Shown: positions 26,036 through 35,556 of the stretch, one piece after another
Layout: each line of letters starts with the position of its first letter
Position numbering within the stretch: the stretch's first letter is position 1
Assembly (NCBI GenBank): GCA_904063045.1
Contig: CAJFCJ010000004.1
Coordinates: forward strand, 1,915,713-1,979,712
DNA from: Dimorphilus gyrociliatus
Lineage: Eukaryota; Animalia; Annelida
Reading direction: 5' to 3'
DNA length: 64,000 nt
Notes under the pieces: generated by a model
The model's input: only the letters and a program-made list of their open reading frames with translations
Databases searched by the model: none
Told to the model about the DNA's origin: nothing
Translations under genes and position numbers: made by a program

Positions 26036-29000
26036 CTATTTACCCACATTATGTGGCCAATCACAAACGTTGATTGCTGGATTAAAAACTGTACCAGGCC
26101 CACAGCTCATTACAAAACATCTTGGAGGGATGTGAGGAGGATTACCAGGTGCACATTGACAAAACTTAGCTGCTTCAACATGCTCATGGTAAAACTTGCC
26201 ATTAGATATATTTTCAGGAGTACAAGGATTAACAGCAGCACAATCACACTTTCCACCTAAAAAAGAAAAAATCAAACTGTTCCACAACACACCATAAAAG
26301 TCAACACTTACTCTCTTCACATGTAGGTCCAGTATGAGTTGGTGGACATAAGCATTCGAATTCGTTTCCTTGATTAATACAAGTTCCGCCGTTTGCACAT
26401 GGACTGGAATCACAGGGCTTCACTTCTGTAAAATATAAAACAAAGGTTGCACATTTGAATATCTTAGTTAAAGGATTTACCTTCAGTACATTGTGGACCG
26501 GTGTGTGTTGGTGGACATAAACATTGGAATTCGTTTCCTTGATTAATACAAGTTCCTCCATTTGCACATGGGTTGGAATCACATGGTTTTACTTCTGCAA
26601 ATTGACAAAAGCATTATATAATGCAGAAAAAATAAATCATACAGTACCTTCAGTACATTGAGGTCCAGTGTGTGTCGGTGGACATAAACATTCGAATTCG
26701 TTTCCCTGATTAATACAGGTTCCTCCATTTGCACATGGATTCGAATCACATGGCTTTACTTCTGCAAATTGAAAAAAAGAGAATGATGTTTATCAAAGAT
26801 GGGGCTAATAAATTTACCTTCTGTGCATTGTGGTCCAGTGTGTGTTGGTGGACATAAACATTGGAATTCGTTTCCTTGATTAATACAGGTTCCTCCATTT
26901 GCACAAGGATTGGAATCACATGGTTTGACTTCTACAAATTGACAAAAGCATCATAAAATGTAGAAAAAAATATCGTACTGTACCTTCAGTACATTGAGGT
27001 CCGGTGTGTGAAGGTGGACATAAACATTCAAATTCGTTTCCTTGGTTGATACACGTTCCTCCATTTGCACATGGACTGGAATCACAAGGCTTAACCTCTG
27101 CACAGTGAAAAATAGTTGTTTAAAATGTAGGTTTTAAAGACCAGTAGCATACCTTCGGTACACTGTGGACCGGTATGTGTTGGTGGGCATAAACATTCGA
27201 ATTCATTTCCTTGATTAATACAGGTTCCTCCATTTGCACAAGGATTGGAGTCACATGGTTTTACTTCTGCAAATTGAAAAAGAGAGAATGATATTTGTCA
27301 AAGAAGGAGCTAATGAATTTACCTTCTGTGCATTGTGGTCCGGTGTGTGTTGGTGGACATAAACACTCGAATTCGTTTCCTTGGTTAATACAAGTTCCTC
27401 CATTTGCACATGGACTGGAATCACAAGGCTTAACCTCTGCAATTTGACAATAGTATTATATAATGAAGAAAAAAAATATCGTACTGTACCTTCTGTACAC
27501 TGAGGCCCGGTGTGTGTTGGTGGACATAAACATTGGAATTCGTTTCCTTGATTAATACAGGTTCCTCCATTTGCACATGGACTGGAATCACAAGGCTTAA
27601 CCTCTGCACAGTGAAAAATAGTTGTTTAAAATATAGGTTATAAAGACCAGTAGCATACCTTCAGTACACTGTGGACCGGTATGTGTTGGTGGACATAAAC
27701 ATTGGAATTCGTTTCCTTGGTTAATACAAGTTCCTCCATTTGCACATGGACTGGAATCACAAGGCTTAACCTCTGCACAGTGAAAAATAGTTATTTAAAA
27801 TACAGGTTATAAAGACCAGTAGCATACCTTCAGTACACTGTGGACCAGTATGTGTTGGTGGACATAAACATTCGAATTCGTTTCCCTGATTAATACAGGT
27901 TCCTCCATTTGCACAAGGACTGGAGTCACATGGTTTTACTTCTGCAAATTGAAAAAGAGGGAATGATATTTATCAAAGAAGGGGTAATGAATTTACCTTC
28001 TGTGCATTGTGGTCCGGTGTGTGTTGGTGGACATAAACACTCGAATTCGTTTCCTTGGTTAATACAAGTTCCTCCATTTGCACATGGACTGGAATCACAT
28101 GGCTTAACCTCTGCACATTGAAAAATAGTTGTTTAAAATATAGGTTATAAAGACCAGTAGCATACCTTCAGTACACTGTGGACCGGTATGTGTTGGTGGA
28201 CATAAACATTCGAATTCGTTTCCTTGATTAATACAGGTTCCTCCATTTGCACATGGACTGGAATCACAAGGCTTAACCTCTGCACAGTGAAAAATAGTTG
28301 TTTAAAATATAGGTTATAAAGACCAGTAGCATACCTTCAGTACACTGTGGACCGGTATGTGTTGGTGGACATAAACATTGGAATTCGTTTCCTTGGTTAA
28401 TACAAGTTCCTCCATTTGCACATGGGTTAGAATCACAAGGCTTAACCTCTGTACATTGAAAAATAGTTATTTAAAATACAGGTTATAAAGACCAGTAGCA
28501 TACCTTCAGTACACTGTGGACCGGTATGTGTTGGTGGACATAAACATTCGAATTCGTTTCCTTGATTAATACAGGTTCCTCCATTTGCACATGGACTGGA
28601 ATCACAAGGCTTAACCTCTGCACAGTGAAATATAGTTGTTTAAAATATAGGTTATAAAGACCAGTAGCATACCGTCAGTACACTGTGGACCGGTATGTGT
28701 TGGTGGACATAAACATTCGAATTCGTTTCCTTGATTAATACAGGTTCCTCCATTTGCACAAGGATCCGAATCACATGGTTTTACTTCTGCAAATTGAAAA
28801 AGAGGGAATGATATTTATCAAAGAAGGGGCTAATGAATTTACCTTCTGTGCATTGTGGTCCGGTGTGTGTTGGTGGACATAAACATTCGAATTCGTTTCC
28901 TTGATTGACACAGGTTCCTCCATTTGCACATGGGTTGGAGTCACATGGTTTTACTTCTATTAAATTAAAAAATAACCTTTTTTGACGGAAGATAAGAAAA

Positions 29001-32000
29001 ATTAGCGATTTACCTTCTGTACATTGTGGCCCAGTGTGTGAAGGTGGACATAAACATTGGAATTCGTTTCCTTGATTAATACAAGTTCCTCCATTTGCAC
29101 ATGGACTGGAATCACATGGTTTTACTTCTGCAAATTGACAATAGCATTATATAATGCAGATAAAAGATATCGTATTGTACCTTCAGTACATTGAGGTCCA
29201 GTGTGTGTCGGTGGACATAAACATTGGAATTCGTTTCCTTGATTAATACATGTTCCTCCATTTGCACATGGATTCGAATCACATGGTTTTACTTCTGCAA
29301 ATTGAAAAAGAGAGATTGATACTTATCAAGGATGGGGTAATAAATTTACCTTCTGTACATTGTGGTCCAGTGTGTGTTGGTGGACATAAACATTGAAATT
29401 CGTTTCCTTGATTAATACAGGTTCCTCCATTCGCACATGGGTTGGAATCGCATGGTTTTATTTCTGGAAAAGTGAAATATTTTTAAATGTATCAATTTGA
29501 TTTCTTTTTATCTTACCGTTTTCGCAGTTTAGACCATTAAAATTGGGGAGACAAGTGCATACATAGTGGTCTGTTCCATCAGGTGTGCAAGTACCCCCGT
29601 TTTGACAAGGGGTCGATTCACAAGCGTCGGTTTCACCAGGAATTATATCAATTATAATACCTCCTACGTTTTGAGTACCAGCTTTCAAATTACAGAATAT
29701 TTTACCACTCAATAAATGTGCATCATGTCGTGGAACGTATAAAACGGCTGGTGATCCTGGTTGTACAGTAACTGAGTCTTTGTAATATGCTCGATTAGGA
29801 AATATATCTTTTGCTGTAGTGTATACAACTGAGCCAGATTGAACAGAGATCTAAATACATTAGAAGTTTAGTGAAATATATGTAAAAAGTTAAAGGTTTA
29901 CCCTTATTCTGGCTCCCTTTGAAGGTATTTCAACTTTGCAGTTTTGGGACTCTTTGGCAGGTAAGTTAGGAATTTGTGTTTTTCCTTTTTTGAATGTTAC
30001 AGGTGCTGAATGTTGAAAAATGTTTATAGTAATTCAGTGATAAATTTTCGATTAAAAAAATTTACAATTGCAAATGGACTTAGTGATTGAGCTATCAGCA
30101 AGTGCTAGTTCGTGAAGGTCTTTCATAAGATGCTTATAGCTGCAAGTGGGTCTAGATGCAACTGCTATTAACTCTGCCACATCGTATAGCTTTTTAGCTC
30201 CAACGGCTATCAATGTTATATCAGCTCTATGGGCTCTTGGTGCGGCTAAGAAAGTCTTCCAAGGATACTTCGATTTACCGGCAGTTAAGATAATAGCCAC
30301 TCGAGGGTTAATTGCCTTATTTCTAGCTCCTTTATCAGATCTGTTTATTTAATATGTTTTTTCAATTAATTAGCTAGTCTTCTTTTCGTATTGTGTAAAT
30401 TACCTAAACATGTCGTCCACGATCGAGTGTAGACCGGCATACAAATTTCTATATCCTTTAATAGGATGGATGGACCTAATATGATCAATAACTTCGGCTT
30501 TTGTTGTGTATGAGTTCAAATAGAATTCTGGGTGAGCCCAAGTAGAAAATTGCAATAAACCGACTCTGGTGTTTTCAGAGCCAATATTAAGGTTTTCAAC
30601 GACTTCTTCTGCAAAAGTTAATGAATTGAGGAAGTATTTATCGCTTATAGTTCCATCTAGAACGAAAACGACATCCAACGCTTTGTTGTTGCAAGCTATT
30701 AAAAAAATGATCAATTTAGTGAGATAGAATATTCTCTCTTGGTCTTTCTACAAACATGGTTCGATCTTGGCCGCTTGAGTTGCAAAGTAGTATGGTATTC
30801 CAGCAATTCTATAGTATCGATGCCAATAGTAGGCCTGACCGTCAATGTCTCTGGGTATTTCTTTATTGACACCGGAGAGGATAATTGCTGCAGCAATACC
30901 AGAATATAAAGGTTTGTCCAAATCTCTAAACGTAACGGTCATCCATGGAATATGAAAATTCGCAAGGATAGCAGCTCTCAAAGCTAAATTCTTTTCAATA
31001 ATTTTGAAAGTATTGTGATAACCAATTAGTCCAACCTGTTTTTTTATAAATATTGATGTATTAATATACGGTACTATAAAGAGTATTAATAAAACAAAGG
31101 ATAGACGACAGATGGCGTATAAAGTTTTGCTTATAACCTAGATAATGTAAGTTGACTATCGTCCCATCGTACGATAGATAATACAATTTTAATTATTGAT
31201 TAAACCTTGAAAATATGAGATGTTTATGCAATAAAATGTAATAAATACTTAAAAATCGAAAGAGCTAAATTGAAAAAATGATAGAAAGTGCTAATCCGAA
31301 TAAAGGATAGATAGAGTAAAGAGGCAAAAGTATTTAAGTGTTTTTTTTTTTTTTTCACGGTGTTGTTAAAATAAACAATGAAAAAAACAAACCAGATATC
31401 AAATTATTGTTAAAAGTTTACTCTTTGCTTTTTCTTTCCAGATTTGTCTATTAAGTCTTTTAGTGATTATTTACTCGAGTCACTTTGCTTTACTTATAGA
31501 TAATTTATGTTTTTCACTAAAGAATAGTAAATAAAATATCAGTTAAATATTTCCCTTTTACCATTTTGGATTTCCTTGTAAATGATGTATTCAAATTTTT
31601 ATTGACAATAGTCATTTTTATAAAAATAGACTAGTTATAATGTTATGTTAATATCTAATTCGTTGTTGTTATTATTGATATTTTACTAGGAAATAGCTTG
31701 AAGCTTATAGCTAGCTCTCTGTTCGACAATAAATAGATTATTGTAGCATAAGTGCTTTAGTTATATTATTAATAATTAGTAATAAAATTTTTTCCCAATT
31801 ATAAAAAAGGTGTAAAAGAGAAGATAGATAAAAAATATCATAATTTCATTATTTTAAAGATGTCTAAGCTGATCTAAGACTGTCAAATTCACTTTTTATG
31901 GGTTTTTAATGAACTATTTTGTTCTCTTTTCCATTTCATTCGTCGATTTTGATACCATGTTTTTACCTATAAACATAGCTTGATTATTATTTTAGGCTAT

Positions 32001-33147
32001 TATTTTAATATATTCGTATTTACTTGAATTTGAGAAAGACCAAGGCGCTCTGAGAGGACAATTCTTTCGCTATTTGATAAGTAGCGGCTAGTTTCAAATG
32101 CTTTTTCCAAACCTAATATCTGTTGTAATATTATCTCCAAATGTACGAATCTATAATTCATAAAGAGATATTTTACCTGTAACTCTGTAAAAACAGTCCT
32201 GGATCTTCGACACTTTTTTAAATCCTCTATCTGATAACTTTTTGATCCAAAGTATACTGGTAATGGAACCGGAATTACAAAAGGATTAAAGGTTTTTATC
32301 GGGCTAAGTTCCGTTTTAAGCTTGAGTTTATATTCATTAGATGAGTATGAACCATGATGATTAGAATCTGATGGTATTGGTAGACGAATATTGTCAAATG
32401 ATTCGATAGAAGAACTTTTCCACATTTTCTTATTGTTTTCACTATTGACATCCATTTGTTCCTTTGTTTCTTCCACATTAGCATCTCTTAAAATATCATC
32501 GATTCTAAATGATTTTTTCATCCTACACAACCTCTCTTTCCGATAGTAATTGGAAAAATAAAAATGTACGAGTTTCTAAACTACGAAATTGTTTATAAAA
32601 CGGCGTTAAATAAACCCTAATTAGAGGCTAATCAAAACATTTTAAAAGACATCAAACAGCGCCGATTATTTACGGTCGAATTGATTTCAAGCTGAGATTG
32701 TTAATTGGATAGCCGTGTGCTTCTTTTTTAAATAGGGTTATTTTTCAAGAGGATATATTCATTAATAAATAATTATCTTTTTACTCGTTTGTTTACGAAC
32801 ACCAAAGAAAGAAAAGAAGCATACACGTGTCCTTTATAGGGAACATTATACTAAATTTTCTACTAACAAAGGTCGTCTTGTCAAAATAATTAATAATGCT
32901 AAAAACTTACTTTCCATATGCCTCCTCTGGGCACGAGAAACCTCAAATTGTTACCATCTTTCGATTCAACGTAAGCTAATCTTCTCAAGAAGAGTTTAAA
33001 GTCGGGAAATATACAAGAGGCGTCTATTTTGGCTACAACTGCTTCGACAACTTCCGCTCCCTTTGCCTTAGGAGTATATATAAGATGTTCATCGGCAACA
33101 ATAGCTACCGGTATAAAGCTTATTGCTAAAAACAAAATCAACTTCAT
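26036..33147 (-). CDS. Secreted modular protein: signal peptide, lysozyme/lytic-transglycosylase-like domain, VWA, beta-rich domain, 20 EGF repeats, CBM14 (peritrophin-A) chitin-binding domain
   Basis: Signal [18 protein letters not shown] (ATG 33147). Exon 1 ends GGIWK (phase 0) and continues VGLIGY at 31035. VWA has [13 protein letters not shown] and TRVGLLQFS. 19 single-EGF exons plus one EGF in the preceding exon. Terminal KFCQC...[22 protein letters not shown] then stop at 26036-26038. Confidence 0.85.
26312..29463 (-). repeat. Tandem array of 19 near-identical exon+intron units (about 167-170 nt; 114-nt phase 1-1 EGF exon)
   Basis: Consensus peptide [38 protein letters not shown], counted 19 times. 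Units are separated by GT-AG introns of about 53-56 nt that fall into a few sequence families. Confidence 0.97.
31914..32521 (-). CDS. Barx: Barx-like homeobox transcription factor (three exons), nested in intron 1 of the EGF/VWA gene
   Basis: N-terminal eh1 motif SFRIDDIL. The homeodomain [12 protein letters not shown]|[32 protein letters not shown]|[17 protein letters not shown] has the Barx-diagnostic [11 protein letters not shown] and [17 protein letters not shown] at 31914-31916. Confidence 0.85.
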
Positions 33148-33857
33148 GCCACCAGTTAAAGGTGTCAAGACCGACTGAAGAAATCAGGCTGGACGACCAC
33201 AAAAGTAATCATGATAAGAAGAGTAAGCGATTAAACTTGAGTTAACAAGATAAGAAATTTATGCGTGGGTTACGACTCATTGGAATGTTATATAACTTTA
33301 TTGCTAATCAAAATTATCATTTGAGAGTCGTTTTTATGATAAAGTAGATAGCTTATGAAGCAAAATTCTTTACAATTTTTAGTAAGCCTATATTTAATCT
33401 ATTTTATATTTCAAATTCATACAATAAATAATATAGTTACATAATTTGTCATAAAATTGATATTTAACCGCTTATACATTAATGTTTTAATAGGGTCTTA
33501 TAAAATGTTAACGTCCTCAATGTTGAACTGACACTCACAATTAATACAATTTAACAATTTATAGGCTGTTGAACGAATATCAATTCGTTTTATGCCATTT
33601 ACATGAATTTAACCATAAGTAAAATATGAAAACATATGGCAATCAAGAAATATTTAATATTCATTATTCAATTTGCCTGAATAGTGTCTAATTAAAAACT
33701 GAAAACTTAAAAGCATAGTCATTATAAGACGCTTTTATGATGCGTTGAAATATTAATCAACTTAAAACATTACTTAAGTTTATGAATAATTAAGGGAAAA
33801 GGCAGCAACACATTGCATTTTCATTTTAATATCGTAAGGATAGGAGGAAGAGGCAAT

Positions 33858-35556
33858 ATGGTAGACAACCCTAACTTTCGAGTGAGAGAAGCATTCGCTG
33901 AAGATCGTTTAGAATCAAATATAAAAAGTTCAGGTATAAAGAAAATTGAAGGATGCTCGGGATGCAAGAAATGCGTATCTTTTGTTTGTTGTCACAAGAA
34001 CGAAATATTGTGCAATAATAAGGAGGCATTAATCTCAAAAAATTTTTCCTTCCTATTAAACCTTTCACAAATTGGAGGTTTATACTTTCCTGGTATCTAC
34101 GTTCGAGATAGCAAAGATAAAATCAAGCTTAAATGGACACTGTCAAGGATTTATTGTTATACTATATCCGCAATTATATTCTTGTGTTGCTTCAAAGTAT
34201 GGTTACTTTTTGGATTGATTGATGGTAATTTCAATATATATCAAATTATGACCATCCTAACTATATCATGGTATACATTGATTGTTACGGAAAATATAAG
34301 TATAGTTAGGGGATTTACGTTGTATAGAGGATTTTCCAAATTTTGTTATGTTTGGAAAGAAATATTTGATAACAGTGCAGAATGTCCACATTATCTAAAA
34401 GAGTTTCAAAATATTAAACGTATGGATAAAATTATAACAGTAATCTGTATCTTAGGATTCGTTATAAATACATGTTTCGTGGGTTATCAAACATATTTAA
34501 CAAATTCAATGGATATGTTAGCGTATCCTTTTAAAGTATCCAATTTATCGAAATCATTAACCTTCACTATAGTATTTTTTGGTGGAATTTCCTGGGTTAT
34601 ACCAATTGGATTCCATTTTATTATTTGTTATATTGTTTACAAGTCATTTGTTATAATAAATGAACAAACGAAAGATTCAATCAAACATGAGTTAGCTGAA
34701 AACTTTGCCACAACATTGGAAGTACTTAGGCAAAGGTACGAGAAATGTTGTGATCTCGTTGAAGCAGCCGACTCGATGATCTGTTTATTGAATGCAACTA
34801 GTTTTGTATCTAACATTTTAAACTCGTGTATAACGTTATACATTATGATTTACGACAAAACTGTTATATCAACGAGTACTATAGCAAGACTCGGTTTATA
34901 CTTCTGGCTAATTACAGCTTTGGGAACACTAATAATTATGTCAGTATCAGCAGCAATTGTTCATGAATCCGTAAGTTTTTAATCAGATAAAGTCAATTTT
35001 TACAATTCAATTTTATTATACTTGAAATATTTTCTTTTAACATAATTACGAAATAACAAAAATATAAAATAACCTTCTATTGACCTTAATATCTGGTTGT
35101 CATATCTCTGTTTTTTTGCGTCGTCTTCATTTAAAAAACAAGGCTCACGAATTGACATTTATATTAAGAGATATCAACTTGAATAAACTTGATATTCAAT
35201 CCCATATGAATGTAAGTTATCAGTGTTTTATTATAATACTGAAAAAGAAAAGCCTTAATATTAAAAATCAACATTCTTTTCAACAGTTATCTTTCTTTAT
35301 GCATAAATTAAATGGAACAAAGATTGGACTGACGGCTTTTAAACTATTCATTATAGATAAAGAAACGATAATGACGGTAAGTTCAAAGAAAAACTGCTTT
35401 TATAGAAAACTTAAGGATAATTTGTATACAATAATATTTTCTCTATTGATTTAGATATTTGGCGCGATGATGACATATTTTGTTGTTTTAATTCAATTTA
35501 AACCAACTACTACAAAAACATGTGTATTTAACGGCACATCAATACTAATTAATTAG
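33858..35556 (+). CDS. Gustatory-receptor-like (GRL, 7tm_7 superfamily) chemoreceptor, 457 aa
   Basis: Exons 33858-34970, 35143-35211, 35287-35376 and 35455-35556, with multiple TM segments. C-terminal signature TYFVVLIQF (TY-x5-QF) preceded by KIGLTAFKLFIIDK. Three phase-0 introns near the 3' end, as is typical of the GR superfamily. Confidence 0.9.

What the first reader, a model, noticed from the sequence alone, without database searches (positions are those of the whole stretch)
26036..33147. Unusual secreted architecture: lysozyme-like head, VWA, a 20-EGF rod and a chitin-binding tail
One polypeptide couples a putative glycan-cleaving or glycan-binding N-terminal domain to a C-terminal CBM14 through a long EGF spacer. 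This suggests a molecule tethered to a chitinous matrix (gut peritrophic layer, chaetae or cuticle) that projects a glycan-hydrolase-like domain tens of nm away. It could act as matrix-anchored antibacterial defence or a chitin-matrix remodeller. I do not recognise this domain combination from a characterised protein.
Basis: partly seen in the sequence, partly recalled or inferred. Interest (0 to 1): 0.8.

Follow-up and report, generated by a model that had tools for sequence, protein, structure and literature searches.

The report
Lysozyme-headed, chitin-anchored EGF-rod matrix protein
A tiny marine worm's gene encodes a secreted 1,302-residue protein with a lysozyme-shaped head, an adhesion (VWA) domain, a rod of 20 EGF modules and a chitin-binding tail; it belongs to an unnamed family shared by molluscs, annelids and arthropods, and nobody seems to have recognised that family's head domain.

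Summary
The minus strand 33147-26036 carries a 26-exon, 3,909-nt reading frame (1,302 aa). All 25 introns are GT-AG and all phases fit. In order it encodes a signal peptide, a ~150-aa head, VWA, a small beta-sandwich, 1 divergent plus 19 near-identical EGF modules, and a C-terminal CBM14.

The head has no Pfam family. It is nevertheless a conserved domain: 697 cluster representatives match at E<=1e-3. A mollusc member folds at pLDDT 94 into a lysozyme/lytic-transglycosylase (GH23-like) shape, and the domain is homologous to the phage family phrog_3108.

The combination is not unique. Head-VWA-...-CBM14 proteins, all unnamed, occur in molluscs, leech and Owenia. Head-VWA proteins occur in springtail, whitefly and mite. 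A second copy lies on another contig of this genome (the scan also noted it there). VWA+CBM14 is the hallmark of the Pif/BMSP shell-matrix proteins.

What is special here is the rod. It has 19 exons of exactly 114 nt, with dN/dS 0.04 at dS 0.66. This copy has also lost two head-motif residues and most of its VWA metal site.

I read it as a chitin-anchored matrix scaffold with a lysozyme-derived glycan-binding or glycan-cleaving head. An antibacterial role remains open. I could obtain no RNA evidence, and a Barx-like gene sits inside intron 1.

The parts
32911..33147 (-). Exon 1: start codon, signal peptide (about 19-20 aa) and the N-terminal half of the head. It carries the E-S ... G-G-I-W-K motif and ends in phase 0 at a GTAAGT donor.
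   Evidence: It is 45% identical to exon 1 of the paralogue and 86% identical to P0025 from a related sample. The exon-1 profile finds 697 cluster representatives.
31036..32910 (-). Intron 1 (1,875 nt), the only long intron. It contains a three-exon Barx-like homeobox gene on the same strand (about 32521-31890).
   Evidence: Read directly from the sequence. Pfam Homeodomain 2.1e-8 on the 32003-32575 frame. The other 24 introns are 51-63 nt.
30756..31035 (-). Exon 2: the C-terminal half of the head domain.
   Evidence: It aligns along the family (W..V.W.DL.KPLYS ... Q-A..W block). Weak phrog_3108 hit at E 0.027. 47% identical to P0058 and 44% to Owenia P0059.
30066..30695 (-). Exons 3 (30695-30404) and 4 (30340-30066): VWA domain with a degenerate metal site (DxTxS, Thr to Arg, Asp to Ala).
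   Evidence: Pfam VWA at 2.1e-18 and 4.8e-6. Alignment with the paralogue and 8 homologues.
29634..30005 (-). Exon 5 (30005-29902) and the first part of exon 6: a ~110-aa beta-sandwich of no named family.
   Evidence: Conserved in the paralogue, Helobdella P0056, P0058, P0128, P0132 and P0039. The AF2 model of the paralogue's copy has pLDDT 72 and eight strands. Matches to CUB, collagenase collagen-binding and CBM folds are only weak.
29517..29633 (-). End of exon 6: the first, divergent EGF module.
   Evidence: Pfam EGF 4.9e-7.
26312..29463 (-). Array of 19 EGF exons, each exactly 114 nt, phase 1-1, with AG/GT borders and introns of 52-57 nt falling into three sequence classes.
   Evidence: Mean nucleotide identity is 89%. 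31 of 38 third codon positions vary, against 3 of 38 second positions. dN/dS is 0.037 at dS 0.66. There are 10 distinct peptides among the 19.
26036..26256 (-). Last exon: CBM14 (peritrophin-A) chitin-binding domain and the TAG stop. There is no transmembrane or GPI-like tail.
   Evidence: Pfam CBM_14 9.1e-8, 32.6 bits against a cut-off of 22.1. It also passes the cut-off in the genome scan. 48% identical to the paralogue's tail.

Best explanation
This is one gene for a secreted extracellular-matrix protein. It belongs to a conserved but unnamed protostome family whose plan is a lysozyme-fold head, VWA, usually a small beta-sandwich, a spacer, then CBM14.

The C-terminal CBM14 fixes the protein to chitin fibrils. 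The 20 EGF modules form a long rod; about 50 nm is inferred from the usual 2.5-3 nm per module. All 20 carry Notch-type O-glucose and O-fucose consensus sites. At the far end, the head and VWA engage other matrix components.

The head descends from a GH23-like glycan-cleaving domain that has phage relatives, and it binds or cuts GlcNAc-type polymers (chitin or peptidoglycan). In this particular copy the Glu-Ser pair is kept, but the Gln and Asp of the G-G-I-W-Q-V-D hairpin are changed to Lys and Gly. The VWA metal site is also largely lost. I therefore read it mainly as a chitin-matrix scaffold or organiser in the manner of Pif/BMSP, with at most altered catalysis.

Shown: the anatomy, the family, the fold and the selection on the rod. 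Inferred: chitin anchoring, rod length, glycosylation, and what the head does.
For: Gene model: 26 exons, all GT-AG, phases consistent, 1,302 aa.

Domains: VWA, EGF and CBM14 are above Pfam cut-offs.

The head is a real domain:
- The exon-1 profile finds 697 representatives at E<=1e-3 and 313 at <=1e-10. Most sit at residues ~20-85 of proteins that continue into VWA.
- Both window exons align along it and keep all 13 near-invariant positions.

Fold:
- The AF2 model of P0018:18-182 used a 69-row alignment that included the window's exons. It gave pLDDT 94 and pTM 0.90.
- An exhaustive structural search of 48,161 chains gave 48 lysozyme-superfamily entries among the top 50. Examples: MltC/MltE Z 9.0, phiKZ gp144 8.7, GH23 chitinase 3w6b 8.2, g-type lysozyme 6.4.
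- The ESM Atlas neighbours after the family's own cluster are SLT, glucosaminidase and destabilase.

Motif: Glu in 57 of 66 heads, Ser/Thr in 66 of 66, at the end of helix 36-45.

Phage link: phrog_3108 matches 39 of 69 heads, best 3.3e-19. hhalign to a phage ORF gives 94.9% probability, E 4e-8.

Same plan elsewhere: the paralogue on C6; Helobdella, Owenia, molluscs and arthropods.

The scaffold role of VWA+CBM14 proteins comes from PMC11291548 and from the annelid tube proteome in PMC8476170.

Changes in this copy are (MIDAS; Q to K, D to G; K is also present in the related-sample orthologue P0025). The rod is under purifying selection. Chitin synthase, GT90 and O-FucT families are present in the genome.
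Against: - There is no transcript evidence.
The fold comes from a mollusc homologue 56% and 35% identical to the two exons.
- Z values of 8-9 are middling for helical proteins. The call rests on the purity of the hit list and on the motif.
- Glu-Ser is retained and exon 1 is 86% conserved in a related sample, so activity may well persist.
- The phage ancestry and most structural neighbours point to peptidoglycan, not chitin.
- Chitin binding by this CBM14 is untested, and it ends before the sixth canonical cysteine.
- I could not confirm here where chitin lies in this animal.
Confidence: 0.5

Rival explanations
1. A matrix-anchored antibacterial enzyme. The head is an active muramidase or lytic transglycosylase held on a chitinous lining (gut, pharynx or egg envelope) by CBM14. 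The EGF rod presents it to bacteria that approach the barrier.
For: The head is homologous to a phage family. Its closest structural neighbours are peptidoglycan-lytic enzymes. The Glu-Ser/Thr pair is conserved in most members and in this gene. Exon 1 is conserved in a related sample.
Against: This copy replaces the Gln and Asp of the conserved hairpin motif. The family is always fused to VWA and usually to CBM14, the signature of structural chitin-matrix proteins (PMC11291548), not of known animal lysozymes. GH23 also includes a chitinase (3w6b), and MltE binds chitopentaose (4hjy). No activity data exist for any member.
Confidence: 0.3
2. Mis-joined model. Exon 1 (33147-32911) belongs to a separate or defunct transcription unit cut off by the Barx-like gene, and the downstream gene starts elsewhere or is not made as a secreted protein.
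For: Intron 1 is 1,875 nt, against 51-63 nt for all the others, and holds a complete same-strand gene. No long (~1,300 aa) protein appeared among the 150 listed hits to the exon-1 profile. No RNA data could be obtained.
Against: Exons 1 and 2 encode the two halves of one compact domain. The intron sits at the same codon and phase as in the paralogue, where it is about 150 nt. The frame upstream of exon 2 has no ATG (the only ORF start listed there is a TTG, at 30981 inside exon 2) and no signal peptide. Exon 1 keeps an intact frame, a GTAAGT donor and every near-invariant family residue, and it is 86% identical in a related sample.
Confidence: 0.08
3. A decaying duplicate. The window copy is losing function (head motif and MIDAS changes), and the EGF array is a recent runaway expansion or an assembly artefact.
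For: Q to K and D to G in the head; three of five MIDAS positions changed.
Against: There is no stop or frameshift in 3,909 nt, and all 50 splice dinucleotides are intact. The array shows dN/dS 0.037 with dS 0.66, and 18 distinct exon sequences among 19. It is therefore old, selected and assemblable. All near-invariant head residues are kept.
Confidence: 0.05

Closest known systems
[quoted passage not shown]
   Same: Secreted, with an N-terminal VWA followed by a spacer and peritrophin-A (CBM14) chitin-binding domain(s). Some subfamilies put repeat modules (Sushi/CCP) or low-complexity stretches between VWA and CB. The role is to link chitin to other matrix proteins through VWA.
   Different: There is no laminin-G region after the CB domain, since the protein ends 8 residues after the fifth cysteine. 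A ~150-aa lysozyme-fold head precedes VWA; neither paper describes a folded domain upstream of VWA. The spacer is 20 EGF. The host is an unmineralised annelid. Whether its VWA falls in the Pif/BMSP clade was not tested.
GH23 lysozyme-like enzymes: lytic transglycosylases (MltE, MltC, Slt70, phiKZ gp144), goose-type lysozymes, Ralstonia A-471 GH23 chitinase
   Same: The predicted fold matches (Z 8-9 over ~120-134 residues). An acidic Glu followed by Ser/Thr sits at the end of a helix, followed about 18-20 residues later by a G-x-[WFM]-Q-[VI] hairpin. From memory of the goose-lysozyme sequence, the family's ...Q-V-D resembles its ...M-Q-V-D.
   Different: No Pfam SLT hit at E<=1 for any of 69 heads. 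Identity is about 10%. No A-Y-N-x-G type third motif. It is fused to animal matrix modules. In this gene Q is K and D is G.
Phage family phrog_3108 (function unknown, ~160 aa)
   Same: Sequence-level homology to the head: 39 of 69 heads match, best 3.3e-19, and hhalign gives 94.9%. Same length. A phage member carries E-S and G-F-F-Q-I-E at matching spacing.
   Different: Stand-alone phage proteins without a signal peptide, VWA or CBM14. The window's own exons match only weakly (E 0.027).
Peritrophins and peritrophic-matrix or cuticular mucins of arthropods (CBM14 plus spacer); matrilins and AMACO (VWA plus EGF)
   Same: Peritrophins use CBM14 as a chitin anchor with extended spacers; the paralogue even has a long (G-K-I-E-R-P)n spacer. 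Matrilins and AMACO combine VWA with EGF strings in matrix proteins. This comparison rests on my own knowledge.
   Different: Neither type has a lysozyme-fold head, and neither combines VWA, EGF and CBM14.

Membership tests
CBM14 / peritrophin-A chitin-binding domain (PF01607) | Profile match above Pfam's gathering score | tested here: met
   32.6 bits against a cut-off of 22.1, E 9.1e-8. 34.4 bits in the genome scan.
CBM14 / peritrophin-A chitin-binding domain (PF01607) | Six-cysteine framework and actual chitin binding | tested here: inconclusive
   The match covers profile positions 5-50 of 53. The protein ends before the last canonical cysteine, and extra cysteines lie upstream. Binding cannot be tested here.
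VWA domain (PF00092) | Profile match above the gathering score | tested here: met
   67.6 and 27.3 bits for the two exons, cut-off 23.8. Together they cover profile positions 1-159 of 174.
VWA domain (PF00092) | Intact MIDAS (DxSxS ... T ... D) | tested here: not met
   The window gene has DxTxS, Arg for the Thr and Ala for the Asp. The paralogue and most of the eight homologues aligned keep the full or nearly full motif.
EGF-like domain (PF00008) | Six-cysteine EGF profile above cut-off; calcium-binding subtype or not | tested here: met
   EGF scores 27.8-31.5 bits against a cut-off of 21.5. EGF_CA scores only 12-14.5 bits against 27, so these are not the calcium-binding type. All 20 modules have six cysteines.
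GH23 / SLT lysozyme-like superfamily | Lysozyme-like alpha-helical fold | tested here: met
   Tested on the homologue model P0018:18-182 (pLDDT 94). The top 28 of Foldseek's list and 48 of the top 50 in the exhaustive search are lysozyme-superfamily chains, with Z up to 9.2. The window's own head was not folded, because exons were not joined.
GH23 / SLT lysozyme-like superfamily | Catalytic Glu at a helix end, followed by Ser, and a G-x-x-Q hairpin | tested here: inconclusive
   E-S is present in the window gene, and Glu is conserved in 57 of 66 heads at the end of helix 36-45. Alignment offsets place it near MltE E64 and chitinase E141, but I had no residue-level superposition. The hairpin Gln is Lys in this gene.
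GH23 / SLT lysozyme-like superfamily | Sequence-profile membership (Pfam SLT and related families) | tested here: not met
   None of 69 heads hit SLT or any lysozyme family at E<=1. The PDB profile search was blank.
GH23 / SLT lysozyme-like superfamily | Glycan-cleaving activity | not testable with these tools
   Needs an enzyme assay.
Pif/BMSP (VWA-CB domain-containing proteins) | VWA followed downstream by CBM14 | tested here: met
   Definition taken from PMC11291548 and PMC7747718.
Pif/BMSP (VWA-CB domain-containing proteins) | Laminin-G region downstream of the CB domain (typical of the shell proteins) | tested here: not met
   The reading frame stops directly after the CBM14.
Pif/BMSP (VWA-CB domain-containing proteins) | VWA falls in the Pif/BMSP clade; protein found in a shell matrix | not tested
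   No Pif or BMSP sequence was available by reference. The animal has no shell.
Unnamed head-VWA-CBM14 family (ESM Atlas cluster of 82, mostly Mollusca) | Head domain directly N-terminal to VWA, CBM14 at or near the C-terminus | tested here: met
   The window exons align with the family throughout.

The most novel reading that the evidence does not exclude
The head is a phage-type lysozyme domain that was taken up, or retained, at the base of the protostomes. It became the standard N-terminal module of chitin-matrix VWA proteins and is still catalytically active in most members. Molluscs, annelids and arthropods would then share an unrecognised class of matrix-bound GlcNAc-polymer hydrolases that shape chitin scaffolds, including those of shells, or police bacteria on them. 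This worm's two copies would be an intact-motif enzyme and a rod-bearing derivative.
Probability: 0.25. Interest if true: 0.7.

Novelty: new variant of a known kind. Interest (0 to 1): 0.55.

Why it matters
VWA-plus-chitin-binding proteins (Pif, BMSP) are central to how molluscs build shells on a chitin scaffold, and similar proteins fill annelid tubes. This gene exposes a sister group of such proteins in three phyla. That group carries an extra, so far unannotated, N-terminal domain with a lysozyme fold and phage relatives.

If the domain cuts or grips chitin or peptidoglycan, it adds an enzymatic or immune function to a class of proteins thought of as passive scaffolds. It would also give Pfam/InterPro a new family.

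The EGF rod is useful in its own right. It is a clean natural case of 19 tandem exons kept almost identical at the protein level while their silent sites have drifted far apart. That separates selection from gene conversion in repeat evolution.

Tried and rejected
I did not resend it or a trimmed version, so read laying was never used.
- Head identity by sequence. Pfam on the separate exons, on the paralogue and on 69 heads was blank. PDB sequence and profile searches gave only chance hits or nothing.
- Word-index protein searches gave one partial orthologue of the paralogue and one EGF fragment.
A single protein then found one phage locus.
- Idea that the head equals the 'long insertion between signal peptide and VWA' of subfamily PifS1. 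I could not test it because no sequence was available. The paper describes low-complexity regions in that zone, so I do not claim it.
- The orthologue's contig from a related sample had no DNA on hand, so the array and the nested gene could not be compared between species.
- Beta-sandwich. The model is only medium confidence (pLDDT 72). Its matches to CUB, collagenase collagen-binding and CBM folds are weak (E about 0.006-0.03, TM up to 0.58). It stays unassigned.
Exons were searched one by one by reference, so the whole-protein architecture search and a fold of the window's own head were left out.
Full report
WHAT IS THERE. The window is AT-rich animal DNA (about 30% GC). Earlier notes of this scan name the genome as the annelid Dimorphilus gyrociliatus. 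I did not verify that. The assembly size of 77.9 Mb is close to the 73.8 Mb quoted for that species in PMC8476170.

On the minus strand I read a 26-exon gene from the ATG at 33147 to the TAG at 26038-26036:
- exon 1, 33147-32911
- exon 2, 31035-30756
- exon 3, 30695-30404
- exon 4, 30340-30066
- exon 5, 30005-29902
- exon 6, 29850-29517
- nineteen exons of exactly 114 nt between 29463 and 26312
- a last exon, 26256-26036

All 25 introns are GT-AG and all phases fit. The CDS is 3,909 nt, or 1,302 aa. The finding's coordinates are exact.

DOMAINS. The whole-protein architecture search and a fold of this protein's own head are therefore left out.
- Pfam gives VWA (2.1e-18 and 4.8e-6 for exons 3 and 4), EGF, and CBM_14 (9.1e-8, 32.6 bits against a cut-off of 22.1).
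- There are 20 EGF modules: one divergent module at the end of exon 6 plus the 19 array exons. TRF sees period 169 and 18.6 copies.
- Exon 5 and most of exon 6 encode a ~110-aa module conserved in the paralogue and in several homologues. It models as an eight-stranded beta-sandwich at medium confidence, with no clear named relative.
- Exon 1 starts with a typical signal peptide. The protein ends right after the CBM14, with no membrane anchor.

THE HEAD. Exons 1 and 2 have no Pfam hit and no PDB sequence hit.
- A three-sequence profile of the mature part of exon 1 (window, paralogue, a related species' copy) was run against 1.84 billion cluster representatives. It found 697 proteins at E<=1e-3 and 313 at <=1e-10.
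- In the long hits the match sits at about residues 20-85, just after a signal peptide. VWA follows from about residue 185, and CBM14 usually comes further on.
- Both window exons align along this ~165-aa domain and keep all 13 near-invariant positions.
- A 69-row alignment, with a Mytilus member as first row and the window exons as separate rows, gave an AlphaFold model with pLDDT 94 and pTM 0.90, containing eight helices.
- Foldseek gave only weak E-values, but its top hits were all GH23/GH19 enzymes.
- Re-alignment gave Z 9.2-6.3 for 28 lysozyme-superfamily entries, then a drop to 3.2.
- An exhaustive comparison with 48,161 chains put lysozyme-type enzymes in 48 of the top 50 places. Examples are MltC/MltE at Z 9.0, MltF, phiKZ gp144 and a GH73 glucosaminidase at 8.7, Slt70 and a GH23 chitinase at 8.2, and destabilase and g-type lysozyme near 6.4.
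- The ESM Atlas gave the family's own cluster first (82 members, mostly Mollusca, VWA 100%, CBM_14 91%; TM 0.93). After it came SLT, glucosaminidase and destabilase clusters.
- Z of 8-9 alone is middling for helical proteins. The call rests on the purity of the list, on near-complete coverage of the domain, and on the motif. That motif is a Glu (57 of 66 heads) followed by Ser/Thr (66 of 66) at the end of helix 36-45, then G-G-I-W-Q-[VI]-D about 20 residues later.
- The domain also shows sequence homology to the phage family phrog_3108 (function unknown). 39 of 69 heads match, best 3.3e-19. The window's exon 2 and the paralogue's match weakly at congruent positions. hhalign of the head profile against a 160-aa phage ORF, which itself carries E-S and G-F-F-Q-I-E, gives 94.9% probability at E 4e-8.

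'Lysozyme-like head' is thus supported at the fold and ancestry level. It is not supported as membership of a curated lysozyme family, since none of the 69 heads hit Pfam SLT.

ONE GENE? Between exon 2 and the stop codon the largest non-coding gap is 63 nt. There is no room for a second promoter or terminator, so the VWA half and the EGF/CBM14 half cannot be separate genes.

The only doubtful link is exon 1 to exon 2. Intron 1 is 1,875 nt and contains a complete three-exon Barx-like homeobox gene on the same strand (another note of this scan also flags it). The arguments for the link are:
- The two exons encode the two halves of one compact domain.
- The intron lies at the same codon and phase as in the paralogue, where it is only about 150 nt.
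- The frame upstream of exon 2 has no ATG; the only ORF start listed there is a TTG at 30981, inside exon 2.
- Exon 1 is 86% identical, including the derived Lys, in an ORF from a related sample.

THE FAMILY. In this genome both the head and the tail have exactly one other match, and both matches lie at the same locus on contig C6. That locus reads head, VWA with a perfect MIDAS, the beta-sandwich, at least 14 diverse EGF modules, a long (G-K-I-E-R-P)n-type low-complexity stretch, and CBM14. The scan's note s1-082154 describes it independently.

Elsewhere, head-VWA-...-CBM14 proteins are annotated only as 'uncharacterized', 'cartilage matrix protein' or 'collagen-like'. They occur in Argopecten, Mizuhopecten, Haliotis, Aplysia, Patella, Batillaria and Babylonia, in the leech Helobdella (with the beta-sandwich) and in Owenia. 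For Mytilus, Pfam found only head and VWA. Head-VWA proteins also occur in Folsomia, Bemisia and a mite. One metagenomic member has head, VWA, sandwich and 7 EGF. Apparent stand-alone heads can be exon-level ORFs of the same kind of gene.

THE ROD. The 19 array exons are 89% identical in DNA, yet 31 of 38 third codon positions vary against 3 of 38 second positions. There are 18 distinct DNA sequences but only 10 distinct peptides, which differ at one to three sites. The mean pS is 0.41, dS is 0.66 and dN/dS is 0.037. The array is therefore old, correctly assembled and under strong purifying selection for an almost invariant 38-residue unit.

A few exon pairs are 96-100% identical, and the introns fall into three classes. 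This points to block duplications or local conversion on top of the selection.

All 20 modules fit the O-glucose (C1-x-S-x-P-C2) and O-fucose (C2-x4-T-C3) consensus known from Notch. The consensus is from my own knowledge. The genome has GT90 and O-FucT family genes. They are not calcium-binding EGFs.

THIS COPY IS DERIVED. Relative to the family and to its own paralogue, the head hairpin reads ...W-K-V-G instead of ...W-Q-V-D. The VWA metal site has Thr for the first Ser, Arg for the Thr and Ala for the Asp. The Glu-Ser pair and all near-invariant residues remain.

HOW IT MOST LIKELY WORKS. Shown: a secreted multi-domain protein with a chitin-binding module at one end and a lysozyme-fold module plus VWA at the other, separated by a strongly conserved 20-EGF string.

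Inferred: CBM14 anchors it to chitin. The genome has at least 4 chitin-synthase-like loci and at least 150 CBM14 matches. The rod spans tens of nm, and the distal end binds or cuts GlcNAc-type glycans and/or other matrix proteins.

VWA+CBM14 proteins are documented chitin-scaffold organisers (PMC11291548, PMC7747718, PMC8476170), and this copy has weakened both its catalytic-site hairpin and its MIDAS. I therefore favour a scaffold or organiser with altered or lost catalysis (0.5) over a tethered antibacterial lysozyme (0.3). A mis-joined exon 1 (0.08) and a decaying duplicate (0.05) are unlikely.

NOVELTY. The gene is a lineage-specific variant, with a homogeneous EGF rod, of a conserved but unnamed family related in plan to Pif/BMSP. 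I found no paper in the held library that links a transglycosylase or lysozyme-like domain with VWA and chitin-binding matrix proteins. PMC7747718 lists VWA-CB proteins for molluscs, nemerteans, phoronids and brachiopods but does not mention annelids.

The unrecognised head domain and the selected exon array still make it worth a follow-up.

Noticed in passing
window 31890-32521, minus strand: A three-exon Barx-like homeobox gene (eh1-like N-terminus, homeodomain split by two short introns) is nested on the same strand in intron 1 of the matrix gene. In a related sample, a 128-aa ORF lies about 460 nt downstream of the orthologous exon 1, so the nesting may be conserved (no DNA available).
   Followed up: partly
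window 33813-34979, plus strand: An intronless 389-aa ORF just upstream of the gene matches the Pfam 7tm_7 chemosensory (gustatory-type) receptor at 26.7 bits, barely over the cut-off of 26.6.
   Followed up: partly
G000 contigs C193, C65, C3, C74, C5 and many others: There are at least 150 CBM14 matches in the genome. Many lie in stop-free frames of about 620-645 aa with two CBM14 each, spread over many small contigs. This is either an expanded intronless family or a repeat-borne gene.
   Followed up: no
L003 8371-9726 (G000:C6, minus strand): The paralogue's last exon encodes about 60 tandem six-residue G-K-I-E-[RK]-P units, then twelve-residue G-K-T-E-R-P-P-K-T-D-G-P units, before its CBM14. 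This is a second, quite different way of making a long spacer in the same family. A related species' copy has a P-S-K-T-E-R-type version (L006).
   Followed up: partly
L009 3707-4189 (IMG/VR contig UViG_3300030433_000983): A 160-aa phage ORF of family phrog_3108 is homologous to the animal head domain. It has no Pfam family and sits just upstream of unannotated 326-aa and 144-aa ORFs.
   Followed up: partly
P0003-P0006, P0161, P0162 (metagenomic proteins, 518-552 aa): These proteins are made of three head domains in tandem (spacing about 165 aa) with no VWA. Some repeats lack the Glu. Their source organisms are unknown.
   Followed up: no
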